Source: Ginglymostoma cirratum
Lineage: Eukaryota
Assembly: GCA_024137785.1 (NCBI GenBank)
Contig: JAHRHZ010000085.1
Location: 14,360,609 to 14,424,608 of the forward strand
Length of the DNA stretch: 64,000 nucleotides
Direction: 5' to 3'
The number at the start of each line of letters is the position of its first letter. The stretch's first letter is position 1. The position numbers were made by a program, and so were the translations under genes. The notes below the pieces were generated by a model that saw only the letters and a program-made list of their open reading frames with translations, was not told where the DNA came from and did not search any database. Of this stretch, positions 39,935-64,000 are shown one piece after another.

Positions 39935-40960
39935 GATGGTGGCAGTGGTGGAGGGGTACTTTTCAGCCTGGAGGCCTGTGACCCGTGGTGTGCCACAAGG
40001 ATCGGTGCTGGGTCCACTGCTTTTTGTCATTTAGGCAAATGATTTGGATGTGAACGCAAGAGGTACGGTGTGAAGAAGGTTACCTCGGACTATAAATGGG
40101 ATCTTGATGGGATGGGCCAATGGGCTGAGGAGTGGCAGATGGAGTTTAATTTAGATAAATGTGAGGTGCTGCATTTTGGAAAAGCAAATCGATGCAGGAT
40201 ATATTCAGTTAGTGGTAAGGCCCTGGAAAGTGTTGCTGAACAATGAGACCTTGGAGTATAGGTTCATAGCTCCTTTAAAGTGGAGTCACAGGTAGATATG
40301 ATAATGAAGAAAGCTTTTGGTAGGTTTGCTTTTATTGGTCAATGAATTGATTACAGGAGTTGGGAGGTCATGTTGCAACTGTACAGGACATTCCTTCGGA
40401 CACTTTTGGAATGTTGCATGCAATTCTGGTCTCCCTGTTATAGGAAGGATGTTGTGAAACTGGCAAGAGCTCAAAAACAATATGTAAGGATGTTGCCAGG
40501 GTTGGAGGGTTTGTGCTATAGGGACGGGTTGAATTGGCTGGGCCTATTTTCCCTGGAGTGTCAGAGGTTGAGGTGTCACCCTACAGAAGTTTATAAAATC
40601 ATGAGGGGCATGGATAGGGTAAATAGGCAAGGTCTTTCCTCCCAGGTGAGGGAGTCCAAAAATAGAGGGCATTGGTTTAATGTGAGAGGGGAAAGATATA
40701 AAAGGGGCCTAAGATGCAACTTTTTCACAATGAGGGTGCTGCATGTATGGAATGAACTGCCAGAGGAAGTGGTGGAGGCTGGTACAATTACAACATTTAA
40801 AAGGCATGTGGATGGGTAAAAGAATAGGAACGATTTAGAGGGATGTGGACCAAATGCTGGCAAATGGGACTAGATTTATATAAGATATCTGGTTGGCATG
40901 GACGCATTGGACTGAAGGGTCTGTTTCTGTGCTGTATATCTCGGTGACTCTATGGCTCTA
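39935..40960 (+). mobile_element. CR1 LINE 3' portion
   Basis: [13 protein letters not shown]; ORF 40370-40819 LQLYRT...FWSPCYRKDV...WNELPEEVVEAG. Confidence 0.92.
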
Positions 40961-42847: not shown

Positions 42848-43561
42848 GAGAGATGGTAGGAAGTGCTGATGCCAGAGTCAGAAATAACAAAGTGTGGAGC
42901 TGGAGGAACACAGCAGGCCAGGCAGCATCAGAGAAGCAGGAAAGCTGACGTTTCGGGTCAGGACCCTTCTTCAGNNNNNNNNNNNNNNNNNNNNNNNNNN
43001 NNNNNNNNNNNNNNNNNNNNNNNNNNNNNNNNNNNNNNNNNNNNNNNNNNNNNNNNNNNNNNNNNNNNNNNNNNNNNNNNNNNNNNNNNNNNNNNNNNNN
43101 NNNNNNNNNNNNNNNNNNNNNNNNNNNNNNNNNNNNNNNNNNNNNNNNNNNNNNNNNNNNNNNNNNNNNNNNNNNNNNNNNNNNNNNNNNNNNNNNNNNN
43201 NNNNNNNNNNNNNNNNNNNNNNNNNNNNNNNNNNNNNNNNNNNNNNNNNNNNNNNNNNNNNNNNNNNNNNNNNNNNNNNNNNNNNNNNNNNNNNNNNNNN
43301 NNNNNNNNNNNNNNNNNNNNNNNNNNNNNNNNNNNNNNNNNNNNNNNNNNNNNNNNNNNNNNNNNNNNNNNNNNCTGCCTACCCGCACTCACCTATCACC
43401 ATCCCACCTATCTTCCCCAGCTCCACCCTTGCTCTCTATTTATTTCAGAGCTCCCTTCCCCCCTCCCCCGTTTCTGAAGAAGGGTCCTGACTTGAAATGT
43501 CAGCTTTCCTGCTCCTCTGATGCTGCCTGGCCTGCTGTGTTCATTCAGCTCCACACTGTGT
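42848..43561. mobile_element. Penelope terminal-repeat hairpin spanning the assembly gap
   Basis: Inverted repeat copies on each side of the Ns; TSD tag(c/t)aatcccaaact at 42833-42847 and 43562-43576. Confidence 0.8.
42975..43374. other. Assembly gap, 400 N
   Basis: Run of N. Confidence 1.
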
Positions 43562-44069: not shown

Positions 44070-47000
44070 GGAGCTTCAGGTGAATGAGCCCCTTGGGAAC
44101 CGTGACCATAATGTGATCGAATTCATCCTGCAGTTTGAGAGGGAGAGGTTAGAATCAGATATAACGATATTGCAATTGAGTAGAGGTAACTATAAAGACA
44201 TGAGGGAGGAGCTGGCCAGAGTTTTTTGAAAGGAGAGTCTATCAGGGAAGATGGTGGAACAGCGATGGCAGGAACTTTTGGGGGGTAAGTTGGGAGGTAC
44301 AGCAGAAATTCATCCCAAGGGAAAAAAAAACATACTAAGAGGAGGATGAGGTAACCAGGACAGACAAGGGAAGTCAGGAACAACGTAAAAGCAAAAGAAA
44401 AAGCATACAACATGGTGAAGATTAGTGGGAAGCCAAAGGATTGTGAAGCCTTTAAAAATCAGCAGAGAGAGAGTTAGGGAGAAGATGAAATCGGAGGGTA
44501 AGTTAGCTAGTAATATAAAGGGGGACAGCAGTAGTTTCTTCTTACAGATATAAGAAGTAAGAGAAAGGCAAGAGTGGACATCGGAGCACTGGAAAATGAG
44601 GCTGGAGAAATAGTAATGGGGCACAAAGAAATGGAGGAGGACCTGAAAGGATACTTTACATCAGTCTTCACAGTGGGAGACATCAGCAACACATCATAGC
44701 TACAAAGGTGTGGGGGGAGCGGGGGGGCGGTAAAGTGAGTGTAGCGGCCATCACTAAGGAGATGGTGCTGGGGAAGCTGAAAGGCCTGAAGGTGGATAAA
44801 TCACCCAGACCAAAGGGACTACAGCCCTGAATTCTGAAGAATAAAGCTAAAGAGGTTGTACAGGTATTGGTGATGATCTTTCAGGAATCACTGGATCCAG
44901 GAAGGATCCCAGAGAGCTGAAAAATGACTAATGTAAAACCACTGTTTAAGAAGGGAGGAAGGCACAAGACAGGGAACTATAGGCTGGTTGGCCTGGCCTC
45001 AATCGTTGGTAAGATTTCAAGCATAAGATTGCAAAATACATAGAAGTGCATGGTAAAATAGGACCCAGTTATCTGGCTTTATCAAGGAGAGGTCATGTCT
45101 GACAAATCTGTTAGAATACTTTGAGGAGCAAGTTAGAGAAAGGAGAGCTAGTAGATGTGATCTATTTGGATTTCCTGAAGGCTTTTGACAAGGTGCTGCA
45201 CAGGGTTGAAGGGGAGGAAATAAAGTCTTTTTAGACGCTAGGGAGACTGGAAGACAGGACAAACAAAAAGTGGAATGATACCAAAAAGACAAAGTTAAGG
45301 GAACTTTACCTGAACGAATGCAATATTTGCAACAAGGTTAATGATCTAAAGACACAAATAGAGATATATGGTATTGTGTGGTATATTGGACAGTGAAAAA
45401 GATTATCTAAGATTACAAAAAGGATCTTGATCAATTGTGCCAATGGGTCGAAGAGTGGCAGATGGAGTTAATTTGGATAAATGTGAGGTATTGCATTTTA
45501 GTAAAACAAACAACAACTGAACTGATACAATTAATGGTAGGGATCTGGGTAGTGTTTCAGCACAGAGACATCTAAAGGTTCAGTTGCATAATTCATTGAA
45601 TTTTGCATCACGGGTAGGCAGGCTGGTTAGGAAGACATTTAGCAAGTTGCTTTCATTGCTTAGGCCATTGAGTATAGGAGTCGGGACGTCATGTCGAGGT
45701 TTTACAGGACGTTGGTGAGGCATCTTCTGCAGTACTGTGTGCAGTTCTGATGTTCCCTTTATAGAAGGGATATAATTAAACTGGAGTGGGTTCAGAAGAG
45801 ATTTGCTAGGATATTGCTGGGAATAGGGAGACTGAGTTATAATAATAGACCGGGAAGACTGGGACTTTTTCACTGGCATGTAGGAGGTTGAGGGGTGACC
45901 TTATTAAGGTTTATAAACTCATGAGTGGCATAGATAATGTGAACGGAAACGATCTTTTCCCTTGGGTGGGTGAGTTCAAAACTAGGGGGCGTATTTTTAA
46001 GGTGAGAAGAGAAAGATTTAAAAAGGACAAGAAGGGCATTTTTTTAACACGAAGTGTCGTTTGTGTGTGGAATGAAGTGCCGGGGAAAGTGATGGATGCA
46101 GGTGCAGTTACAACATTTGAAAAATGTTTGGATAAGTTCATGACTAGGAAAGGGGTTTTGAGGGATTTGGGCCAAAAATAAGCAGGTGTGACTAGTTTAG
46201 TTTGGGAACATTGTTGGCATGGACTGTCGGACCAAAGGGTCTGCTTCCGTGCTGTATGACTCTATCTATTTGCCTTACAGAAACATGACTGCACGGTGAC
46301 CAGGAGTGGGGACTGAATATTCAAGAATACATGGTGTTAGGATGGATAAACAATATGGATAGGAGTTGCACTGATAATAAAAGACGGGATCAGTACATTA
46401 GTATGAGAGGATTTCAGATCAGAAGGACAAGGCATGGAATCTGTTTGGGTGAAACTAAGGAACAGCAGGGGGCAGCAGACATTGGGTTAGCGTTATTTTA
46501 GACCACCAAATAGTGGTTGTGTGGGGCATAGTATTAATCAAGAGATGGAAGAAGCAAGTAGCATGTGCAAAAGTTGTCATGGTGCCTTCAATCTGCATAA
46601 TGACTGGGAAACCAATTGAACACTAAAGCTGTGGAGGACAAGTTTCTGGAGTGTTAGAGCAGCATGTTGAGGAGCCGACTGCGCAACACTCTATTTTAGA
46701 TTTATTATGACGTAATGAAAAAGGGCTAAGTTTCAGCCTTGCTGTAAAAAAACTTCTACGGATGAGTGCCCACAGTATGACTGAATTTTGTATTTATTTA
46801 GGAAGTGAGGTGGTTCAATCTGAAGCAAGGGTATTAATTTTGAATAAGGGAAATTATAAAGCTGGAACTACTAACTGGCTGGGGTGATATGGAAAAATAC
46901 ATTAAAAGGCATAACTACATACATAATGGAGAGTCTTACAATGAAATGACTAACAGCAACTATGTATTCCTTCAAGGTTTAAAACTTAAAAAATGGTGAC

Positions 47001-49639: not shown

Positions 49640-51860
49640 CTGAATGTTTTGGGATCAGTGACCATAATTCTGTGAGTTTTAAGTCACCTATGGATAATGA
49701 TAAGTATAGTCCTCGGGAGAAGGCACTAAATTGTGGGAAGGACAAGCACCAGATTGGGGGCAGCTGTTTGAGGCAGAGGTATTCATCTAGCATGTGGGAA
49801 TCTTTTAAAAGCCAATTGATTAGAGCTCAGGACCAGCATGTTCCTGTGAGAACGAAGTGTAAGGATGGCAAGATTCGGGAACCTTGGATGACAGGGAAAT
49901 TGTGAGCTTAGTCAAAAAGAAAAAGAAGGCATATGTAATATTTGGGAAATTTAAGACAGACAGACCCCTCGAATGATATAGAGAAAGCAAGAAAGAACTT
50001 AAACAAGGAGTTAGGAGGGCTAAAAAGGGCCATGAAATGTTCTTGGCAAACAGGATTAAGGAAAATCCCAAGATATTTTGTGCATATATAAGGAGAATGA
50101 GGGTGGCTAGGGAAAGGATATGTCCACTCAAGGACAAAGGGGAGAATTTATGCCTGAAGCCAGAAGAAATGAGTGAGGTTCTCAATGAATACTTTGCATT
50201 GGCGTTCACAAATGATAAGGACATAGTAGATAGTGAGTCTAGGGAGAGGTATGCTGATATTCTAGAACAAGACCTAGGAGCTGCTGGGGTTTTTGAAAAG
50301 CATTAAGGCAGAGATGTTCCCAAGACCTGATGCGATCTATCCCAGAATGCTGAGGGAGGCAGGTGAGGAAGTCGCTGGGGCCTGATACAAAATCTTTGTA
50401 TCCTCATTAGTCACAAGAGAGGTCCTAGAGACTGAAGTATAGTCAATATTGTTCCTTTGTTAAAGGAGGGCAATGGGAATAATCTGGGAAAATACAGGCT
50501 GGTGAGCCTTATGTCAGTGTTAGGGAAAGTATTGGAGAAGATTCTTAAGGACAGGATTTACTCACATTTGGAAAAGTATGGACTTATTAGCAATAGGTAG
50601 CATGGCTTCGCATGAGGAATGTCATGACTCACAAACTTGATTGAGTTTTTTGAGGAAGTGACAAAGATAACTGATGAGGGTCAGGTGGTAGATGCTGTTC
50701 AAATGGACTTTAGCAAGGCCTATGACAAGGTCCCTCATCGCAGGCTGATATGAAAGGTGAAGTCATATGGGACCCATGGTGAGTTGGTAAGATAGATACA
50801 GAAATAGCTTAGTCATAGAAGACAGAGTGCAGCTGTGGAAAGAATTTGTTCAGTTTGGAGATCTGTGACCAGTGCTGTTCCCTGTTGTTTGTAAATATAT
50901 ATAAATAATATGGAGCAGAATGTGGGTGGTCTAATTAGTAAGCTTGAGGATGATGCAAAAATTGGATGAGCTGCAGATAGTGATGAGGATTGCCAGAGGA
51001 AACAGCAGGGTATAGATGGACTGGAGACTTGGACAGACATATGGAAGAATGGAATTTATTTTGGACAAATGTGAAGTGATGAATTTTGGAAAGTCTGATG
51101 CAGGAGGGAAATATACAGTAAATGGCAGAATCCTTAAAATCATTAACATACAGAGGGATCAAGCCTGACAGGTCCAAAGTTCCCCAAAAGTGGCAACTTA
51201 AATGGATAACGCGGTCAAGAAGGTATATGGCATGCTTGCCTTCATTGGCCAGGGCATATAGTATAAAAATTGACAAGTCATTTTGCAGCTGTATAAAACT
51301 CTAGTTTGGCCACATTTGGAATATTGTGTATAATTCTGATTGCCACACTACCAGAAGGATGTGCAATCTTTGAAGAGGGTACAGAAATTGTTTACCAGGA
51401 TGTTGCCTGGTTTGGAGGGTATTAGCTACGAGGAGAAATTGGACAAATTTAATTTGTTTTTCCTTGAACATTGGAGGTTGAGGGATGACTGATAAAAGTT
51501 CACAAAATTATGCGAGGTATGGATAGAATGGATAGTCAGAGTCTTTTTCCCAGGGTAGAAATGTCAATTACTAGAGGACATAGGTTTAAGGTAAAAGGGC
51601 GAAAATTTAAAGATGTGAGAGGTGAGTTTTGGACACAGAGGGTGGCACATGTCTGGAATGTGCTGCCAGAGAATGTGGTAGAAGCAGATACTATAGCAGC
51701 TTTTAAAAACCATCTCGACAGATACATGAATAGGCAGGCAAAAGAGGGATACAAACAGCATAGAGGTAAAAGGTTCTTAGGTTAGAATGGTATCATGTGT
51801 CAGCAAAGACTTAGTGAGCCGAAGGACCTGCTACTGTACTGCACTGTTCTTTGTTATTCC
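49640..51860 (+). mobile_element. Long CR1 LINE ORF2 remnant
   Basis: SDHNSV, REPWMT, KENPKIF, YRLVSL, MDFSKAYDKVPH, through to WNVLPENVVEA. Confidence 0.92.
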
Positions 51861-54349: not shown

Positions 54350-55805
54350 CTGAGCAACTAAACACCATGAGGAGCATTTAACAGTTCATCCACTTCACTA
54401 ACACCTTCCACCCCAAACTTAAGTTCACCTGGACCATCTCTGATAACTCTCTCTCCTTCCTAGACCTCTCTGTCTCCATCTCTGGTAGCCACCTGGAAAC
54501 TACTATCTATTTCAAGCCCACCGACTCCCACAGCTACCTAGACTACACTTCCTCTCACCCACCTTCCAGCAAGAATGCTATTCCCTATTCCAAATTCCTT
54601 TGCCTCTGCCCCATCTGCTCCCAAGATGAAACATTCCACTCCGAGACATCCCAGATGTCCTCATTTTTCAAGGATGCAATTTCCCCTCCACAGTGGTCGA
54701 AATTGCCCTCACCGCATCTCTTGCGTTTCCCGCACCTCAGCCCTCACACCCCCTCCCCGTAATAAAAACAAAGACAGAATTCTTCTTGTCCTCACGTATC
54801 ACCCCATTAACTTCCGGATTCAATGCATCATTCTCTGCCACTTCCACCACCTACAATCTGACCCCACTACAAAGGATATATTTCCCTCCGCACCCTTATC
54901 TGCCTTTCAGAAGGACCACACTCTGCACGACTCTCTCATCCACACCACACTCCCCACTAGCCCCACCACCCCTGGCACTTTTGCCTGCAGGAGGTGCTAC
55001 ACCTGCCCCTACACCTCCCCCCCCATCCCAGGCCCCAAGAAAACCTTTGACGTTAAACAGATGTCCGCTAATGTGGTGTATTGTATCCGCTGTTATCAAT
55101 GTGGCCTCCTCTACATCGGGGAAACTAAGTGAAGGCTTGGAGACCACTTTGTGGAACACCTACACTCGGTCCATGACAAATGACAACACCTCCCAGTCAT
55201 GAGCCACTTCAACTACCCCTCCCACTCCTTGGACAACATGTCCATCCTGGGCCTCCTCCAGTGCCACAATGATGCCACCTGAAGGCTGGAGGAACAGCAT
55301 CTCATATTCCACCTGGGAACCCTACAGCCCAATGGTCTCAATGTGGACTTTACTAGCTTCAAAATCTCCCCACCCCCGACCTCATCGTCCCTGGCTCCTT
55401 GACCTGACCATCTTTTTTCCCACCTATCCGCTCCTCCCACCTCAATGACTAACCCCCAACCCCACTTAATACTACTAACCTCATCCCTGCATCCCTGACC
55501 TGTCCATCTTCCCTCCCACCTACCCTACCCTCCCTCCTCACTGACTAACCCCCCATCCCAACTGTTACCTATACTCACCTTTACTGGTTTCATCCCTGCC
55601 TCTTTGACCTGACTGTCTTCTCTCCACCTATCTGCTCCTCTATCCATCTTCTATCCGCCTCCCCCTCTCTCTATTTATTTCAGAATCCCCTTCCTCTCCC
55701 CCATTTCTGAAGAAGGGTCCAGACCTGAAACGTCAGCCTTCCTGCTCCTCTGATGCTGCTTGGCCTGCTGTGTTCATCCAGCTCTACACCTTGTTATCTC
55801 GGATT
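54350..55805 (+). mobile_element. Penelope-like retroelement, 3' half (RT end, GIY-YIG endonuclease, terminal repeat)
   Basis: NVVYCIRCYQCGLLYIGETK*RLGDHFVEH; LEEQHLIFHLGTLQPNGLNVDF; C-rich repeats, then terminal repeat with CTGAAGA...GAAACGTC. Confidence 0.9.
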
Positions 55806-56282: not shown

Positions 56283-56343
56283 ATGAATAGCTGCTTGGCC
56301 GCTCGCTGTAGGCTCGCTGTCCTTTTGACCTTCCTCTGGGCAG
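56283..56343 (+). CDS. VJ-C1 Ig-superfamily receptor, exon 1 (leader)
   Basis: MNSCLAARCRLAVLLTFLWA, phase-1 donor CAG|GTGGGT. Confidence 0.8.
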
Positions 56344-56637
56344 GTGGGTCTCACCACAGTCTCTGGGATCCTTTGCCTTCTCTTCGCCTCCTTCATTTGA
56401 GAGAAGTCCTCTTGTCCCCCTAACTCTGTCTCTCTCTTCCCCCAAGATTCTAAGGACATCCCGCGGTTATGGTGGGGTGGGGGAAGGAAAAAGGCGCTAT
56501 ATAAATATTTTGCCGGCTGTTGAGGAGATCCCGATGTTGATTTCCCTCTGTCCGGTCCGGGTCTGCCGTTTCCGGCACCATTCCTGTTGGTTTCTGTCTC
56601 TGAGAGTTTTGTCTTTTTTTTCTGTCTCTCTCCACAG

Positions 56638-56955
56638 TCCTTGCGAATTCCAGCTTCAAGGTAGCTCAGTATCCCGAAATCCTCAACCAGACCGTCGGCT
56701 CCAACGCGACTTTCTTCTGTACCTTCCCCTTTGCTAGGGATGTGTCCAGGGTCCGGGTGAGCTGGTGGAAGGACGGTGAGCGGGGATTCCTCCGGGAAAA
56801 GAAGGATTCCAGGTATCACTTTGAAATCCGGAATAAAGCCAGCGCCGCTTTCCACCTCCGGGGTGTGGAAGTCTCCGACTCCGGGCTCTATTTCTGCCGC
56901 GTTAGCTATGGGGATAGAGCTGCAAGCGGGAGCGGCACACGACTCCTGGTCACCG
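56638..56955 (+). CDS. VJ-C1 receptor, exon 2: germline-joined VJ-type V domain, NKp30/NCR3-like
   Basis: Long pyrimidine tract plus cacAG; G|GTAAGT; 318 nt, phase 1-1. FKVAQYPEILNQTVGSNATFFCTF...VSWWKD...FHLRGVEVSDSGLYFCRV...SGSGTRLLVT has the B-strand Cys, C-strand Trp, DxGxYxC and GxGTxLxV. Confidence 0.93.
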
Positions 56956-57484
56956 GTAAGTAAATCACATTTACACCCTTACCCCAACCCAACACGGGTG
57001 GGGACGATTCCGCGAACGGGAGGCTTTTGTAATCTTAGTCAGATCCCAGATCAGCGACAGAGAATCCCAGGCAGGAATCTAAAACATTGCTGGCACGCTT
57101 ACTGACCTCCAGCTCCAGGGACAAAAACACAGTTGCTGGAAAAGCTCAGCAGGTCTGGCAGCATCTGTGAAGGAGATAACAGAGTTAGCGTTTCGGGTCC
57201 GGTGACCCTTCCTCAGAACTGATTCATTCATTCAGAGATAGTAAGAACTGCCGATGCTGGAGGCAAAGATAACCCAGTCCAGTTCCACAATGTGTTACCT
57301 GGGACCCATTCATTCCTCTGTCTTCGAGACTGCCATCATTTCACACCGGGAATATTGGCCCGAGGACAGAGGGACGGGGATTACAATGTGTTTAAGTCAT
57401 GGGTTATTTCTCACTCCATTGCAGAGTCAAACTGGAAAACTCTCCACAAAAAAAAATTGTAAATGAGCAAATGAAATTTTGGCA

Positions 57485-57578
57485 GAGATAATAGGTACTG
57501 CAGATGCTGGAGAATCCGAGATAACAAGGTGTAGAGCTGGATGAACACAGCAGGCCAAGCTCTACAGCTTGTTATCTT
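57485..57578. mobile_element. Very short Penelope-end hairpin insertion with 16-bp TSD
   Basis: aaatgaaattttggca at 57469-57484 and 57579-57594. Confidence 0.85.
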
Positions 57579-57589
57579 AAATGAAATTT

Positions 57590-58190
57590 TGGCATTTATT
57601 GCTGGAGGAATAGAGTATAAAAGTGAGGAAATGTTGCCGCACCCGTACAAGGCTTTAGTGAGACCACACACGGAGTACTGCATAAAGTCTTGGCCTCTTT
57701 GAGGAGGGATGTAGTTGTATTGGAGGCAGTTCAGAGGAAGTTCCCAGATTGATTCCAGAGATGAGGGGTTTGTCTTAGGGAGAGAGATTGAGCAGTTTCG
57801 GCCCATACTGTCTGGAGTTTAGAAGAATTAGAGAAGATCTAATCGAGGTGCAGAAGATGCGCAAGGCGATTGACAAAGTAGACATAGAGAGAATGTTTCC
57901 CCTTGTGGGTAAACTAGGAGAGGTTATAATCTTAGGACTGGGGTAGCAGATTTAAAACAGAACTGGGGAGCAATTACTTCTCTGAGGCTCGTGAATCTAT
58001 GAGAATTCCCTACCCCAGTGTGCGATGGATGTCTGGGACACCTAATAAATGTAAGCAGGAGACAGAAGTTTAATGAGTTAATGCGTTAAAGGAAGGCAAA
58101 TGGAGTTGAAGTGAAGCTGAGACCAATGCTGATCATGTTGAATGTCGGAGTAGACTCTGAATTGCTGACTCCTGCCGCTAGTTTTATGAG
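57590..58190 (+). mobile_element. CR1 LINE 3' end in intron 2
   Basis: YKALVRPHTEYC; LEFRRIREDLIEV. Confidence 0.8.
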
Positions 58191-58809
58191 CCTCCGGACC
58201 CTGTGTCTCTGCAGAAGCCTGGGTTTTATGGGAATATTTGAGCAGGGATTGAATATCCCAGGGCTGCAGAATCCCTTTGGATAACCATCTGATGGCGCCT
58301 CTGTGTCCATTTAATCCTCATTCCAATCAGTTTACCCCCCGCTGGCCCTGACCCTGAGTTCCTGAACCTAGCGGAATAACCGTGTAATTTCCAGCCTTTC
58401 CCCGCAATCCTTTCCAACTTTCGCTGAAAGGCAGATGAAACCGGGATTGAAATCCTGTTGAACATGAGCTGTAGCAGATGCCCTGGTTTCTGTTTAGTGT
58501 CACACTGGCGGTATGTAACACATTATCACCAGGAGAGAGGGGAATAGACCTGCGAGTGATTAAACATTTAAAAAAAACTTTAGACTTAAAATTACTTAGT
58601 GGGGTTCTGTATTATAATTAATAAAGGCTAACATGAACATAAAATCAAACTCCATTAATTAGCGGATTAATTTATTCGGTTGTTGTCTACAGTGAGATAG
58701 AATGGACAACAGTTGAAGGTTATGATGAGTTAACGCAGTGGCAATATTTCACAAACGCTTGGCGAGTTTAAATCATTATCTCTCTTGTATCACTTGCGTG
58801 TAATGCTGG

Positions 58810-58975
58810 GGCTATATTCCCTCTCCTTATACTTACATCGTCTCCCCATATCCCTATAATCCCTCTCTTTATCCCTATATTCCATTCCCTAACCCTATAT
58901 TTCCTCCGTTTGTCCCTATATTCCACCCCCGCCCTACATTCCCTCTCTTTATCCCTTTATTCTCTCCCCATTTCC
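58810..58975. repeat. Degenerate pyrimidine-rich tandem repeat
   Basis: Recurrent ccctatattcc / tccctctctttat units. Confidence 0.65.
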
Positions 58976-60566
58976 CTGCTAGGATTTTCCATTGGGTTTA
59001 GTGACAATGGAATTGGAGGCATTTTTAGGAAGACAGTCTCATTGAAAGATCCCAGGAACGGGCCTGATCTTCCACGGGGCACTGACCCAGGGTCGTGATC
59101 TGTGCTGTCCGCCAGCACGGAATCCCCAGCAGGTTTAGGACACACTGCCCTCAGTGCGAATAGCGCTGGGAAGCATCTGGTCGGCAGCTGGCTGTTCCCC
59201 TGAGCTCAGAGACCTCTGCACGTTGGGATACCGGACAGCCACCGAGCGCGGAGTTTTAACCGGGCAGCGGGGCGATGTGTTGTTAAAATAGGGAGGAAAG
59301 GAGCTGGGGTGGGGGAAGTGATTGACCAATACCGACTTTTTTTTTTGGTAAAATGAGGCTCTCCCATAAAACAGAACGTTCCCGTTTGCCAGATTATTGG
59401 GAGATAACAGTGTCCTCGGAATTTCTTTTGTACCCCACCCGCATCTGGTGTTTGTGTGGTACAGCCGCCTCGCCCCCCAGCACATACTGAGAGGTGACTG
59501 AGGGCTCTTTCCAAGAGTGGATTGTCAGCAGGAGAGAGATGGAGTTTGTGAATGAACTGACCACAGGGTGGGTCTGTAGGGGCAGGAGAAGGAGTTACTG
59601 AGGGATCTCCCCGTGATGAAGCGCAGACCCAAGAAAGATGCAGCCCAGACCTGGAGCAGTGGGGAAGGTTTTGCGGGGAGGCTGGGAGCTGCAAGGTGGA
59701 GAGTTTTGTGTGGGGCTACAGAATCGGGGGGCAATGGGGTGTCACAGAAGCTCCAGCCTGAGAGCAGTTCCAAACCACTTTCACTCGGCGTGTGTCATTG
59801 AGCGAAATAGACACAGGGACTGGCTGTGAAACTGCACGGGGATCCTACCATGGGATCTTACCGTGCCATCGCCCTATCGGCTGCACTGAACCGGCGATCC
59901 AGGGCTCACACCAGGACTCAGCAAACGCAGGGAAGGCTGACAGCGAGAGAATGATTAAAGCTCCGCTCGCTATAAAAGACCAAATGGGACAAACAGAAAG
60001 AATTCAGCAGCAGTGCGAAGGAAAAGCAAGAACTGTGGAGACCGGAACCTAAACCAAACTAGGGAAGTGCTGGAGAAACCCGGCAGAGCTAGCAGCCTGT
60101 GTGTGTAGATTGAGTTCACATTTCCAGTTCACTAGCCAGTGTTCAGACTCAGAAGAATTTCTGATGAAGGGTCTAGGCCCGAGACGTCAAGCTTTCCTGC
60201 TGCGATGATGCTGCTTGGCCTGCTGTGTTCATCCAGCTCCACACCTTGTTATCTCAGAAGCAAAGCGGGCCGGTTCTATCAGCTGTAGCCAGTACCGAAA
60301 GAGCAGTGCAAAGTGAACTCGAATCCCCTCAAAAGTCCCGCTCGCTGCAGCTGTTTGGTACCTCAACAGGCTCCCATCTCCTCGGAGGGAGCTTGCTACA
60401 GGTGTAGCGGTAACACTATCCCCGATCCGAGCTGCTGTGTCATTCCGAATTCAGTATCACTCTCGTCCTTTCACGACAGCAGCATAACAGGAGCTTGTTC
60501 AGCCCATCAGCCGTGACCAAATTAAATATCCTGACCTACTCCTCATATCTCTTTTAGCAAATATGG

Positions 60567-60692
60567 TTCACACAAGTCTCAACAGTTACAATTGGTTTAA
60601 TGTCAGTTATTATTGGTTAACACAAGTCTTAACAGTCATAGTTGATTAATTGCTATTTAACAGAAGTCTTAACAGTTACAACTGGTTTAATA
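60567..60692. repeat. Three-copy degenerate tandem repeat
   Basis: aca(c/g)aagtct(c/t)aacagt(t/c)a repeated three times. Confidence 0.75.
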
Positions 60693-62090
60693 TTGATTGT
60701 TATTTGTGAAAGAAGATTTCAAATTTCCTGTGCAGAAGTATTTGTTAGTCTCATTCCTGAAAGGTTTCGTTCTAATTTGTACACCGTTACCCCGTCCTAC
60801 ACTCGCCAGTGGCAGAAATAGCCACTCTGTAATCAGCCTATGTCCCCCAATGCTGATAACTTCAATCACATCGCCCCCTCAGCTACTGAGCTGTAGAGAA
60901 TACAGATGTTCTTTTTTCCCCTGTCGCCGCTTCTTCCTAACTAGCCCTTTCGGGTTCCAGAGGACACTTTGGTAAATGCAAACAGCTTTCTGTCCCAAAC
61001 CAATTCCACCATGCTCAGGACTGTTTCCAGGGGCTACATCAGAGTTTTTTTTAAAGCGGGCACATGAACTGGATCCAATTGTGTTCTAACACTGGACACA
61101 CCACAGCCAGCATTCCACGAGCCTTTTGGTTGTTTTCTGTATCAGTTTATGGCATTTTAATAATTGATCTATCACTCCCAACGCCCGAAATCTCTCTGGA
61201 TGCCGCCACTGATATTCCCCAATTAGAACAGATTCAGTTCTATCCTTTCCAGCTCCAAAGTGAACGGTTCTCACACAAGCCTGTATCGAAATGTGCTTCC
61301 AGTTTCTCCCATTTCCTTAGTCTACCGCTATCTCTTCGTGAAGCTATCCATTCACATTTCTAACCTTTATCTTTTGGACCATCACTGATATGCAGGCTTG
61401 GTTCCCTCCTCCCAAAGTCTAAGTCTAATCAATGTGGTGTGCAGTGCACTCCTATCAGTTCGATTTTCCCCATTCGGCGTTCCTGCCATTCGCCTAATTT
61501 TCCGATCCTTAGTCGGTGAGCGTTAACAGCCGACAGTCTCAGAGCTAGAGATATCCGATACAGTCACCCAACTCCAGCCCCTGGGTTTGTGAGCGACCAC
61601 AGAATTAACCCGAGCGCTTCTCAATAGCATCTGTTTTCACTTGTGATCTAAATGTGTCGAGGCGGACGAGGGTCTTTTTGAAGATTTTAGCGGCGGCCGA
61701 CATATGAAGGAGGGTAAAACCCAGGCGCTGAAACCCACCGAGTGAGTGTGTCTGAGATTAAAGGTATATTTTCTGCTGCCTATCAGTATTCCTGAGGTTG
61801 GGAAAACAGAGAGCGGAGAGGAAAACTCCCGTATCCCAGTCTCTAAAGACCCTCAGAGCGAGGGTGCCGTCGGCGTAAACCTGGGAGAAAGTGTTCTGTG
61901 TGCACAGAAATAAAACAAAAGTTAGATTTAAACTCGTGCCGAGAGAATGTGGGTCAGACAGAGTCCTAAGAGGGATGACTCAAATGAACATAGCAATAAA
62001 AAAAAGGACAATTAAAGCTGCAATTGAACCCAAAGGGATGATCCCCACTGGAAACTGACGCGAGAATGATACTGACTTTCTCTCCCCAAG

Positions 62091-62396
62091 CTTCCGCGGA
62101 TTCTCCCCAGATTGTCCCGACCTTGTTTCGGAGAGACTCCGCAGTCTTCCTGAGACTTGCCTGTATCTCTGGGGCCTTCCACTCGGAGGAGATCACTATC
62201 AATTGGTTTATGAACGGCAGCGAGGTGCTGAGCGGAATCCGCAGTCAGGTCGAGCCGACGCCGGACAAACGCTTCAAGGCTTCCAGTTACCTGGAGGGGA
62301 CGCAGCCTGTTCGCAATGGGACGGTGTACAGCTGCCGAGTGTCGCACCAGGGCAAGTGGGTGGAAACCCGGTACACTTACATCTCCGGTCCTGAAG
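62091..62396 (+). CDS. VJ-C1 receptor, exon 3: C1-set Ig domain
   Basis: Branch-like actgac plus tttctctccccaAG; AAG|GTACGG; 306 nt, phase 1-1. LACISGAFHSEEITINWFMNG...RFKASSYL...VYSCRVSH fits LxCxxxxFxPxxIxxxW and YxCxVxH. Confidence 0.92.
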
Positions 62397-63884
62397 GTAC
62401 GGCGCTTTCCAATGGCTTGTTTGTGGGGTTTTTGTGCCAGTCTGTCTGTTCTAATCCTAATTCCCAGCACTTGGCCCATAGCTTTGTATGCCTTGGCGTC
62501 GCAATCTAAATACTTCTTCGTCAATTTGTCCTCTGAAACTAGTGGGACATGAACGTGGGTCTGCTTTGTAAACTGGTTGTACTACACGCAGACATATTTC
62601 TGTCAGAAAGGTGATGCTTGGAAGATTGGTGACCTAGTAGCTTTCTAAAGGTGATGCCATAGAAGATTGGGAAATGAAATTCGGGGCTCCCAAAGACAAA
62701 ACCAGATTAATAAGCCCCTCAAAGCGAAAGTCTCCTCCAGTGCTATCTGATTTGTTCATGCCCCCTATCAGTGGCATTTCCTTGTCTGAGTAGGAGCAGT
62801 TCATGGAACATGTCTTGAGGTGTTAGTGACCTGCAGCAATAACCATTTCCCACTCTGCCATCTGCCAGCAGATAGCATGTGTAAGGCATAGAAATGAAGT
62901 ACGTTCCTCAGAAGGCCATCTCCCTCTGATCAAACTCCCTGTGCTAATGGAGAAGACCCAGTGAAATAAAACGCATGTATTGTATCTTAACACAGACTTA
63001 CAATCCTGACTGGCTCCTTCATTCAAAATCACTTGGGTGGCCTTCATTTTAAAACCGTTTGACTTCTATCAGCAAGTGCTTACAGCATATTTATATTCTG
63101 TGGAGAGTGAAGACCCTAAAGACTCCCAGTTTTTGCTGCAGTGTTGTATTTTGGGACTGTAATGTAGAGTACATTATTACACCTGTGCCTTGGGATAAAA
63201 TATTTATCAGCAGGGAAATATTTTGCCAAATGCCTGCTCACAAACTTGATGGCTCTTAAAGGTCATGATATTTTGACATTTGGGCTAACTGCTGTCACCA
63301 CAATTCAGAAGTTAAAGTAGAAATTGATCAACCCGAAATGGCGTTGATCAGTTTCAGTAGCTGTGAAAGCTGAGATTGAGTGCAGCTCCGTTAGAGAGAA
63401 ATGTTGACATTAACCCTGAATGCCTTCAGTTCTTTGAACGGACAGAGCACAGACAGGACAGACAGAAGCTCCTCTAGTCCAGGTCTACCACAGAGAAGGA
63501 CCAACATCAATGGTGATCTTGTCCAGTCCATCAGTGGAGAAATGCAGATTTGTTACAGAGGAGACTTTTACAGTGAGTGAGGACACAGTTAGACTAGCAG
63601 AGGACATAAAAGGTCAATTAAAGCATTTCTCCTCTACCCATTGTTCCATTGCCATCCTGACAATTTTACAAACATATATATTTCTAACCAGTAAGTATTA
63701 TTTACAACCGCTACATTTACTGTCAGGATGTGGTATTGACAGATTAAATCACCTTATTGTTCAATGTATCGGTGTTGGAGTGTATGAGTGTTGAAGTATG
63801 CATGTGTTGTATTGTTCACACATTTCCTGTGGTATGATGCTGCTATCATATTGAATTACGTATTTGTACTTTGAGCTTTTGCAG

Positions 63885-63998
63885 AGCCAGCTTCAGGTGT
63901 TCTGCCTTGGTGGATCTATATCTGTGTTGGGAGTGGGGTTTTCCTCCTGCTGCTTCTGATTATTACAATAATACTTTGCAAATTCTGCACGTGCAGAG
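63885..63998 (+). CDS. VJ-C1 receptor, exon 4: transmembrane; gene continues beyond window end
   Basis: Acceptor ttttgcAG; 114 nt, phase 1-1; EPASGVLPWWIYICVGSGVFLLLLLIITIILCKFCTCR; the final two bases of the window are GT. Confidence 0.88.
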
Positions 63999-64000
63999 GT

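What the first reader, a model, noticed from the sequence alone, without database searches (positions are those of the whole stretch)
56283..63998. Non-rearranging VJ-C1-TM receptor: antigen-receptor architecture with an NKp30-like V domain
Seen: intact leader, single-exon V with J-like GSGTRLLV, C1 exon and TM exon, all phase 1, with no recombination signals. Known: V(J)+C1 is the TCR/Ig light-chain layout; C1 domains are largely confined to Ig, TCR, MHC, tapasin, SIRP and some B7 proteins; NKp30 has a lone VJ domain. The V here tracks recalled NKp30 motifs (VxQxPEI, GSxA..C.F, VxWxxD, AxxHxRxV..D..Y.CRV, GxGTRLxV). Inference: a member of the germline-joined VJ-C1 class proposed to resemble the pre-RAG antigen-receptor ancestor, likely to be auto-annotated as SIRP-, tapasin- or Ig-like.
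Basis: partly seen in the sequence, partly recalled or inferred. Interest (0 to 1): 0.8.

Follow-up and report, generated by a model that had tools for sequence, protein, structure and literature searches.

The report
Shark non-rearranging VJ-C1 receptor gene
This is a real, spliced shark gene for a membrane receptor built like one pre-joined antibody light chain or T-cell-receptor chain; it is the conserved single-copy member of a large shark and ray family that annotation pipelines call "SIRP-like", and it is not specifically related to NKp30.

Summary
Leader, single-exon V with a J-like GSGTRLLV strand, C1 exon and transmembrane exon are all intact, phase 1 and bounded by GT-AG. The gene carries no recombination-signal heptamer. 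One RNA contig joins leader to V directly, and other contigs break exactly at the V and C1 exon edges.

The layout is that of one antigen-receptor chain, and Foldseek's best matches are antibody light chains.

The "NKp30-like V" claim does not hold up as specific. Both domains nest inside a chondrichthyan V-C1 family. Within it, the gene falls in a one-hit-per-species orthologue group (nine species found) that runs from skate to sharks. Human NKp30 scores 28 bits against the V profile and TCR V-alpha 35. No NCR3-named shark protein appeared in any named hit.

It is not a SIRP member either: it has one C1 rather than two, an uncharged transmembrane segment, and orthologue tails without a conserved canonical ITIM.

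The scan has already found this family several times on other DNA of this genome. This copy stands out for old orthology, a very conserved transmembrane segment and a non-ITIM tail. The function is inferred.

The parts
56283..56343 (+). Leader exon (coding part): MNSCLAARCRLAVLLTFLWA plus 1 nt; phase 1 donor CAG|gtgggt. The 5' UTR runs on upstream.
   Evidence: An RNA contig joins it to the V exon and extends upstream of 56260 (X2 record 1). 17 of 20 residues are identical to orthologue P0162.
56638..56955 (+). Single V(J) exon, 318 nt, phase 1-1. V-set domain with Cys27/Cys86, the WW(K/R)DGE C strand and three N-glycan sequons.
   Evidence: (V-set E 7e-8). 90.5% identical to P0162 and 52-75% to the other orthologues. 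Contig X7 record 8 covers exactly this exon.
56928..56951 (+). J-like G strand, GSGTRLLV (GxGTxLxV), contiguous with the CDR3-like loop. The Phe of the canonical FGxG is replaced by Ser.
   Evidence: G97, L102 and V104 invariant in the orthologues. Full-length matches to TCR V-alpha plus J and to NKp30 run through this stretch.
62091..62396 (+). C1-set exon, 306 nt, phase 1-1. Cys24/Cys81, Trp38 and the YSCRVSH motif.
   Evidence: (C1-set E 9e-12). Contigs X2 record 7 and X7 record 15 begin at 62090.
63876..64000 (+). Stalk, transmembrane and juxtamembrane exon, cut by the window end. Alternative in-frame acceptor at 63885. Uncharged TM LPWWIYICVGSGVFLLLLLIITIIL followed by CKFCTCRG.
   Evidence: (40 of 41 residues identical to P0162; 77-90% to distant sharks). 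AlphaFold2 places a helix at the equivalent residues 240-269 of P0162.

Best explanation
The window holds the first four coding exons of an intact, transcribed gene for a type I membrane receptor of an orectolobiform shark (earlier notes say nurse shark). The order is leader, germline-joined VJ-type V domain, one C1-set domain, short Cys-free stalk, uncharged transmembrane helix. The cytoplasmic tail lies beyond the window.

The gene belongs to a chondrichthyan-wide family of non-rearranging V-C1 receptors that pipelines label SIRP-like. Within that family it sits in an old orthologue group, one hit per species, found from skate to sharks.

Mechanism (inferred). The V domain binds a conserved ligand that is not yet known. 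It probably acts as a monomer or a non-covalent oligomer, not as an Ig/TCR-type V-V dimer. Three things point that way: the interface Phe of FGxG is absent, the conserved interface Gln of antigen-receptor V domains appears by eye to be absent too, and several orthologues carry an N-glycan sequon at that point. The C1 domain acts as a spacer.

The strongly conserved transmembrane segment (PWWIYIC..GSG) probably mediates association within the membrane. Signalling would go through a tail that, in the orthologues, lacks a conserved canonical ITIM. Instead it keeps a juxtamembrane Cys/basic cluster, MxYTAxD, a PxxPPR (SH3-type) motif and (V/L)xYATPxL (a YxxP-type phosphotyrosine site).
For: Anatomy and domain calls. 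No RSS heptamer.

Nearest relatives are all chondrichthyan V-C1 proteins (295 hits at E<=1e-3).

Orthologue group, one hit per species: P0162, Stegostoma, Hemiscyllium, Chiloscyllium, Scyliorhinus torazame, Cetorhinus, Heterodontus, Heptranchias, Leucoraja. The next-best relatives found in Heptranchias and Heterodontus are only 33-37% identical to the query P0002.

Separate trees agree. In the V tree the window sits in the 10-row set of orthologues, which is not resolved as a clade of its own there. That set lies inside a 16-row clade (SH-aLRT 96), which lies inside the 79-row family. In the C1 tree the orthologues form a clade at 99, with branching close to the species tree.

Fold: AlphaFold2 on orthologue P0162 gives confident V and C1 domains and a TM helix. 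Foldseek's best 50 matches are Fab chains, where checked light chains, E about 1e-15.

Conservation and tail motifs. TM identity.
Against: The window's own tail was not seen. The tail motifs come from database orthologues, of which the closest, P0162, is only about 90% identical.

The V-to-C1 junction was not displayed letter by letter. RNA depth is low (about 4 reads on the V exon in the polyA run). Tissue, cell type and ligand are unknown.

The monomer inference rests on missing interface residues, not on a test. The very conserved TM segment could equally mean an obligate partner chain.

The orthologue counts rest on a word-indexed search that can miss copies.
Confidence: 0.75

Rival explanations
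1. It is a member of the NKp30 (NCR3) family that has gained or kept a C1 domain. Its V would then bind a B7H6-like ligand.
For: The V is a non-rearranging VJ-type domain. Human NKp30 chains match it end to end, J strand included (E 4.6e-4 with the single sequence; 28.4 bits, E 1.2e-5 with the profile). Like this gene's J-like strand, NKp30's J (from my memory of it) lacks the FGxG Phe. Sharks have a divergent multigene NCR3 family (Kinlein 2021, cited; paper not held).
Against: TCR V-alpha, VNAR, PD-L1 and CD79b score as high or higher. None of the hits I named from the top 150 HMMER list is a shark NCR3. The only NCR3-named hit (sturgeon, rank 122) falls outside the family clade on a long branch. 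Word searches with V-only family members returned only V-C1 family proteins, and those V-only proteins are C1-skipping isoforms. NKp30 has no C domain and has a TM arginine; this TM is uncharged. Earlier notes place the nurse-shark NCR3 genes on other pieces of the genome.
Confidence: 0.07
2. It is the elasmobranch orthologue of a true SIRP (alpha, beta or gamma) that has lost one C1 domain.
For: NCBI names several orthologues PTPNS1-like or SIRP gamma-like. With a family C1 profile, SIRP gamma is the first hit that is neither Ig nor UrIg (79.1 bits over two C1 domains, rank 20). The wider family contains ITIM-tailed and short-tailed forms, like paired SIRPs.
Against: There is one C1 exon, not two. 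SIRP V domains are absent from the best 60 PDB matches of both the single V and the V profile. Orthologue tails lack a conserved canonical ITIM. A 2026 survey dates the SIRP family to Tetrapoda (PMC13262535). The only neighbour reported is an ADGRG1-like gene, which from my own knowledge does not lie beside the human SIRP cluster.
Confidence: 0.08
3. It is one chain of a two-chain, antigen-receptor-like complex. It would pair, through its C1 domain and its highly conserved TM segment, with the sister paralogue that shares the PWWIYIC TM motif, or with another partner.
For: C1 domains of Ig, TCR and MHC normally pair. The stalk plus TM is the best conserved region (mean pairwise identity 0.73). 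The TM motif is shared with an equally old sister group that has a Lys-rich, Tyr-free tail. In Hemiscyllium and Chiloscyllium both paralogues lie on the same chromosome-size contig. The overall fold is light-chain-like.
Against: There is no stalk cysteine for an interchain bond and no charged TM residue. The V-V interface Phe is missing, and the conserved interface Gln appears by eye to be missing. SIRP shows that C1 domains can exist unpaired. No pairing test could be run.
Confidence: 0.1
4. It is a germline-joined immunoglobulin light-chain or TCR gene, of the kind known in cartilaginous fish.
For: It has a V-J-C1 layout. Ig lambda constant is the best single C1 match (46.6 bits). TCR V-alpha is the best full-length V match. 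Some relatives are named Ig lambda-1-like or TCR beta-like.
Against: The scores are those of distant IgSF kin (about 20-25% identity). The nearest 80 or so relatives are all V-C1-TM receptors with signalling tails, not Ig or TCR. The gene has its own TM and a long cytoplasmic tail, no interchain Cys and no FGxG.
Confidence: 0.02

Closest known systems
SIRP family (SIRP alpha/beta/gamma; PTPNS1)
   Same: Non-rearranging VJ-type V followed by C1-set domain(s), type I membrane anchor, tyrosine-bearing tail. The wider shark family has inhibitory-tailed and short-tailed forms, like paired receptors. SIRP gamma's C1 domains are the best non-Ig, non-UrIg match to the family C1 profile. This is the usual pipeline name for the gene's relatives.
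   Different: SIRPs have V-C1-C1 and SIRP alpha has ITIMs (PMC12975943). Here there is one C1, an uncharged TM and orthologue tails without a conserved canonical ITIM. SIRP V is not among the best 60 PDB matches. SIRP is dated to tetrapods (PMC13262535).
NKp30 / NCR3, including the shark NCR3 family
   Same: Germline VJ-type V with a GxGTxLxV strand that lacks the FGxG Phe. Significant end-to-end match to human NKp30.
   Different: NKp30 has no C domain and, from my own knowledge, has a TM arginine and is MHC-linked. The V here is no closer to NKp30 than to TCR V-alpha or VNAR. No shark NCR3 appears among the named relatives.
UrIg / UrIg2 (non-rearranging elasmobranch antigen-receptor-like genes)
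   Same: Elasmobranch genes with a single VJ exon followed by C1-type domains. UrIg2 is the second-best PDB match of the C1 profile (103 bits over three domains).
   Different: The crystallised UrIg2 construct is V-C1-C2-C3 and forms a disulfide-linked dimer; UrIg is linked to the MHC and UrIg2 to the Ig/TCR complex (PMC12227049). This gene has one C1, a TM anchor, a signalling tail and no stalk Cys.
Ig light chain / TCR chain
   Same: The same V-J-C1 order, with phase-1 exons. Foldseek's best 50 hits are Fab chains, where checked light chains (E about 1e-15). Ig lambda C is the best single-domain C1 match.
   Different: No RSS, V and J in one exon, no FGxG Phe, no interchain Cys, its own long cytoplasmic tail, and only about 20-25% identity.
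[quoted passage not shown] 2019)
   Same: Non-rearranging VJ receptors with tyrosine motifs, discussed as relics of an antigen-receptor precursor (cited in PMC10751288).
   Different: From my memory of the abstract, PRARPs are V-(C2)-TM, not V-C1, and are described from bony vertebrates.

Membership tests
Chondrichthyan V-C1 'SIRP-like' receptor family (unnamed; pipeline-annotated) | Leader / single VJ exon / one C1 exon / TM exon, with the family motifs (WW.xGE C strand, GxGTxLxV, Y(S/T)CxVSH) | tested here: met
   (family consensus).
Chondrichthyan V-C1 'SIRP-like' receptor family (unnamed; pipeline-annotated) | V and C1 each nest inside the family in separate trees | tested here: met
   V tree: family of 79 rows (SH-aLRT 93) and subclade of 16 rows (96). 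C1 tree: orthologue clade at 99. Quick trees on about 105-112 columns, without Ig/TCR/SIRP reference rows.
SIRP | Ectodomain of one V-set plus two C1-set domains | tested here: not met
   One C1 exon and no other Ig exon in the window. Orthologue proteins are V-C1-TM. Definition from PMC12975943.
SIRP | ITIM tail (alpha) or basic TM residue for DAP12 (beta) | tested here: not met
   The TM has no charged residue. Orthologue tails have MxYTAxD and xYATP, and no conserved [ILVS]xYxx[ILV]. The window's own tail lies outside the window.
SIRP | V domain groups with SIRP D1 | tested here: not met
   No SIRP chain among the best 60 PDB matches of the V exon or the V profile.
SIRP | C1 domains group with SIRP D2/D3 | tested here: inconclusive
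   SIRP gamma scores 79.1 bits over two domains (rank 20), comparable to Ig heavy-chain constant domains and below Ig lambda C (46.6 bits for one domain).
SIRP | Binds CD47; synteny with the SIRP cluster | not testable with these tools
NKp30 / NCR3 | Single non-rearranging VJ-type V domain | tested here: met
NKp30 / NCR3 | V followed directly by stalk and TM (no C domain); TM arginine | tested here: not met
   A C1 exon is present and the TM is uncharged. The defining feature itself is from my own knowledge.
NKp30 / NCR3 | V nests with NCR3 V domains | tested here: inconclusive
   Human NKp30 scores 28.4 bits against 35.4 for TCR V-alpha. The sturgeon NCR3-named protein lies outside the family clade. 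No shark NCR3 among the named hits. The deposited nurse-shark NCR3 sequences could not be fetched.
UrIg / UrIg2 | VJ exon followed by three C domains (as in the crystallised UrIg2 construct), forming a disulfide-linked dimer | tested here: not met
   One C1, a TM anchor and no stalk Cys. Definition from PMC12227049.
Rearranging or germline-joined Ig/TCR | RSS-flanked V and J segments, or V and C nested in Ig/TCR clades; FGxG J motif; interchain Cys | tested here: not met
   No CACAGTG in the gene. The J-like strand is SGSG. No stalk Cys. The nearest relatives are not Ig or TCR.

The most novel reading that the evidence does not exclude
This gene and its equally old sister paralogue share the near-invariant PWWIYIC transmembrane motif. 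The novel reading is that they are surviving non-rearranging VJ-C1-TM chains that associate in the membrane like the two chains of an antigen receptor. That would make them an independent relic, beside UrIg/UrIg2, of the pre-RAG receptor layout. They would lie outside the known MHC and Ig/TCR complexes.
Probability: 0.08. Interest if true: 0.85.

Novelty: new variant of a known kind. Interest (0 to 1): 0.4.

Why it matters
Single-exon VJ genes joined to C1 domains are what researchers look for when they ask which gene the RAG transposon split. The current front-runners are UrIg and UrIg2 (PMC12227049), and SIRP and NKp30 are the classic innate examples.

This gene shows that elasmobranchs also keep a membrane-anchored, light-chain-shaped VJ-C1 receptor as a stable orthologue from skate to sharks, found once per species. 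That contrasts with the fast-turnover clusters of the same family that earlier notes of this scan report elsewhere in this genome. A conserved single-copy gene is the easiest family member to study for ligand, expressing cell type and signalling. It should also be included when V and C1 phylogenies of antigen-receptor origins are built.

The gene is not a new kind of system. Public pipelines already predict the family, and this scan has met it repeatedly.

Tried and rejected
Joined model. Full-length work used database orthologues (P0002, P0162) in their place.

Papers not held: Flajnik 2012 (B7H6/NKp30), Ohta & Flajnik 2015, Kinlein 2021 (shark NCR3) and Flajnik 2023 (UrIg). A search for 'PRARP' returned only unrelated uses of the word. 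I found no held paper that describes this shark family.

Low-yield searches. The word search on the V region of P0162 returned only orthologues. The word search with V-only family members returned only family proteins and showed that the V-only forms are C1-skipping isoforms.

Rejected readings: germline-joined Ig/TCR, and true SIRP or NKp30 membership (see the membership tests).

Negative results. There is no second copy in the window. Ten neighbouring ORFs gave no Pfam hit. Rfam gave only a sub-threshold let-7-like hairpin in an intronic repeat. A findings look-up by sequence was blank.


Full report
OBSERVATION

- Leader, 56283-56343 (61 nt): MNSCLAARCRLAVLLTFLWA, donor CAG|gtgggt.
- V exon, 56638-56955 (318 nt): a 105-residue domain ending ...YFCRVSYGDRAASGSGTRLLVT, donor CCG|gtaagt.
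- C1 exon, 62091-62396 (306 nt): contains LACISG...INWF...YSCRVSH.
- Fourth exon: stalk, an uncharged transmembrane helix (LPWWIYICVGSGVFLLLLLIITIIL) and CKFCTCRG. The window ends inside this exon.

Every intron is phase 1. Pfam calls V-set (E 7e-8, above its cut-off) and C1-set (E 9e-12). The whole window has 13 CACAGTG heptamers against about 12 expected by chance. None lies between 54696 and 64000, and the J-like strand is contiguous with the V exon, so no recombination signal separates V from J. tblastn finds no further V or C1 exon in the introns or elsewhere in the window.

One refinement concerns the fourth exon. The exon therefore probably starts at 63876, with 63885 as an in-frame alternative.

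TRANSCRIPTION

I had one call for laying reads (runs chosen).
- A contig of run X2 joins 56340 to 56635. That is exactly the 294-nt intron 1, allowing for three ambiguous letters (CAG on both sides).
- A 540-nt contig of run X7 covers the V exon edge to edge and then carries 30 letters that do not match the intron.
- A contig of X2 has 29 such letters before 62090.
- A 1227-nt contig of X7 starts at 62090.

So the leader-to-V junction is shown. The V-to-C1 junction is implied, and it is the same junction (LLVT-A-SAD.PQI) as in all annotated orthologues. PolyA RNA raw reads give a depth of only about 4 on the V exon.

WHAT IT IS

A HMMER scan of the V exon against 1.84 billion representative proteins gave 295 hits at E<=1e-3. 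Hits with several matched stretches can rank high on summed weak matches. The single-domain hits are almost all V-C1 proteins. Every one of those that I looked up is chondrichthyan: chimaera, sharks or rays.

NCBI names for these proteins include:
- 'tyrosine-protein phosphatase non-receptor type substrate 1-like' (that is, SIRP alpha-like);
- 'signal-regulatory protein beta-1/gamma-like';
- 'immunoglobulin lambda-1 light chain-like';
- 'tapasin-related protein-like';
- 'natural cytotoxicity triggering receptor 3 ligand 1-like';
- 'M1-specific T cell receptor beta chain-like'.

A word search with the best hit (Heptranchias P0002) found one close relative per species in Cetorhinus, Heterodontus, Scyliorhinus torazame, Hemiscyllium, Chiloscyllium and the skate Leucoraja. 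It also found a masked protein, P0162, whose 90% cluster holds Stegostoma. P0162 is 90.5% identical to the window in V, 87% in C1 and 97.6% in the TM region. The next relatives found in Heptranchias and Heterodontus are only 33-37% identical to the query P0002.

Separate trees agree with each other. In the V tree the window sits among the ten orthologues, which that tree does not resolve as a clade of their own. They lie inside a 16-row clade (SH-aLRT 96), which lies inside the 79-row chondrichthyan family. In the C1 tree the orthologues form a clade at 99, with branching close to the species tree. The sister group in the 16-row clade (bamboo sharks, stingrays, chimaera) shares the PWWIYIC transmembrane motif but has a Lys-rich tail without tyrosine.

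The gene is therefore an old orthologue, found once per species, inside a family whose other members earlier notes of this scan report in clusters.

TESTING 'NKp30-LIKE'

- Against PDB sequences, the V exon alone hits TCR V-alpha (E 5e-6), PD-L1, amphioxus IgVJ-C2 and then NKp30 (E 4.6e-4).
- A profile of ten orthologue V domains gives TCR V-alpha 35.4 bits, VNAR 31.5, PD-L1 28.9, CD79b 28.6 and NKp30 28.4.
- SIRP V is not in the best 60 in either search.
- The nearest V domains outside chondrichthyans are reptile and turtle multi-V receptors, some with ITIM-like tails. A sturgeon protein that UniProt names NCR3 comes further out, on a long branch.
- V-only family members turned out to be C1-skipping isoforms of V-C1 genes, and searching with them returned no NCR3-named protein.

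The NKp30 likeness is real. It is the general likeness among VJ-type domains, not a specific affinity. The deposited nurse-shark NCR3 sequences and the papers describing them were not available, so this test is incomplete.

THE C1 DOMAIN AND THE FOLD

- The C1 exon alone matches Ig lambda constant best, then UrIg2 and MR1 alpha-3.
- A family C1 profile scores Ig lambda C at 46.6 bits for one domain, UrIg2 at 103 bits over three domains and SIRP gamma at 79.1 bits over two (rank 20). No TCR C, MHC alpha-3, tapasin or B7H6 appears in the best 60.
- AlphaFold2 on orthologue P0162, with a 40-sequence family alignment, gives confident V and C1 domains, a TM helix at 240-269 and a disordered tail.
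- Foldseek's best 50 PDB matches are Fab chains, where checked light chains, at E about 1e-15 and 16-25% identity.

HOW IT PROBABLY WORKS (INFERRED)

The stalk has no cysteine and the TM has no charged residue. The J-like strand lacks the Phe of FGxG, and the C strand reads WWKD; from my own knowledge, antigen-receptor V domains have a conserved interface Gln at about this point. Several orthologues carry an NGT sequon at the start of the G strand. These points argue against an Ig/TCR-type V-V dimer. They favour a monomeric or loosely associated receptor such as NKp30 or SIRP.

Among the orthologues the stalk plus TM is the most conserved region (mean pairwise identity 0.73, against 0.64 for V, 0.61 for C1 and 0.59 for the tail). 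A D-E strand stretch (FEIRNK.SA.F.L) is invariant.

The orthologue tails keep four features:
- a juxtamembrane Cys/basic cluster;
- MxYTAxD, whose Tyr is lost in the skate;
- PxxPPR;
- (V/L)xYATPxL.

No canonical ITIM is conserved. This agrees with an earlier first-reader note about a tail exon 3.8 kb beyond this window. I read the gene as a ligand-binding receptor that signals through non-ITIM tyrosine and proline motifs, and that probably associates with something in the membrane.

COMPARISON WITH KNOWN FAMILIES

- SIRPs are V-C1-C1 with ITIMs or a DAP12-binding TM residue (PMC12975943), and a 2026 survey dates them to tetrapods (PMC13262535). Membership fails on domain number, the tail and TM, and V similarity.
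- NKp30 lacks a C domain.
- UrIg2 as crystallised is V-C1-C2-C3 and forms a disulfide-linked dimer; UrIg is linked to the MHC and UrIg2 to the Ig/TCR complex (PMC12227049).
- PRARP is cited as another VJ relic (PMC10751288). It could not be tested.

The gene is best described as a variant of the known kind 'non-rearranging VJ(-C1) innate receptor'. It belongs to a chondrichthyan family for which I found no describing paper among those held.

PRIOR NOTES

This scan has already reported the same family several times on other DNA of this genome, in part on the same chromosome piece 4.5-12 Mb away. It has reported the NKp30 family on other pieces. I reached the family independently through.

LIMITS

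The window's own tail was not seen. No reference sequences of SIRP, NCR3, UrIg or Ig/TCR could be placed in the trees. The trees are quick searches on about 110 columns.

Noticed in passing
window 57131-57260, 57484-57584, 60158-60258 (intron between the V and C1 exons): Short repeats that are hugely over-represented in RNA and contig runs: depth 470-1500 in polyA reads against about 4 on the V exon. 57515-57560 and 60213-60258 form a 46-nt inverted pair, 96% complementary. 57515-57584 folds back and gives a sub-threshold let-7-like Rfam hit (32.6 bits; gathering score 53.5). Hammerhead-like strings are visible by eye, but Rfam gave no hammerhead match.
   Followed up: partly
window 63874-63885: Two in-frame acceptor sites 9 nt apart in front of the TM exon. 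Orectolobiform orthologues include the three extra residues (AFA) and other sharks lack them, so alternative or lineage-specific use is possible.
   Followed up: partly
relatives P0165 vs P0161 (Scyliorhinus torazame); P0138 vs P0189 (S. canicula): Annotated isoforms skip the TM exon (a form lacking the transmembrane segment, possibly soluble) or the C1 exon (a V-TM form). The all-phase-1 exon structure keeps such skips in frame.
   Followed up: partly
V exon peptide residues 61-73 (about window 56820-56858): The D-E strand stretch FEIRNK.SA.F.L is invariant from skate to sharks, while the CDR-like loops vary. This is a conserved face away from the usual binding loops, and I have no explanation for it.
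   Followed up: no
window 58810-58969 and 60567-60710: Tandem arrays of degenerate units (21-41-nt spacing, CCCTATATTCC-type) and of 40-50-nt units inside the V-C1 intron.
   Followed up: no
window 40370-40819, 45888-46181, 51510-51785, 54575-55132; gap 42975-43374: ORFs that look by eye like retrotransposon (LINE-like) tails and a GIY-YIG-like fragment lie upstream of the gene. None reaches a Pfam hit. There is a 400-N assembly gap.
   Followed up: partly
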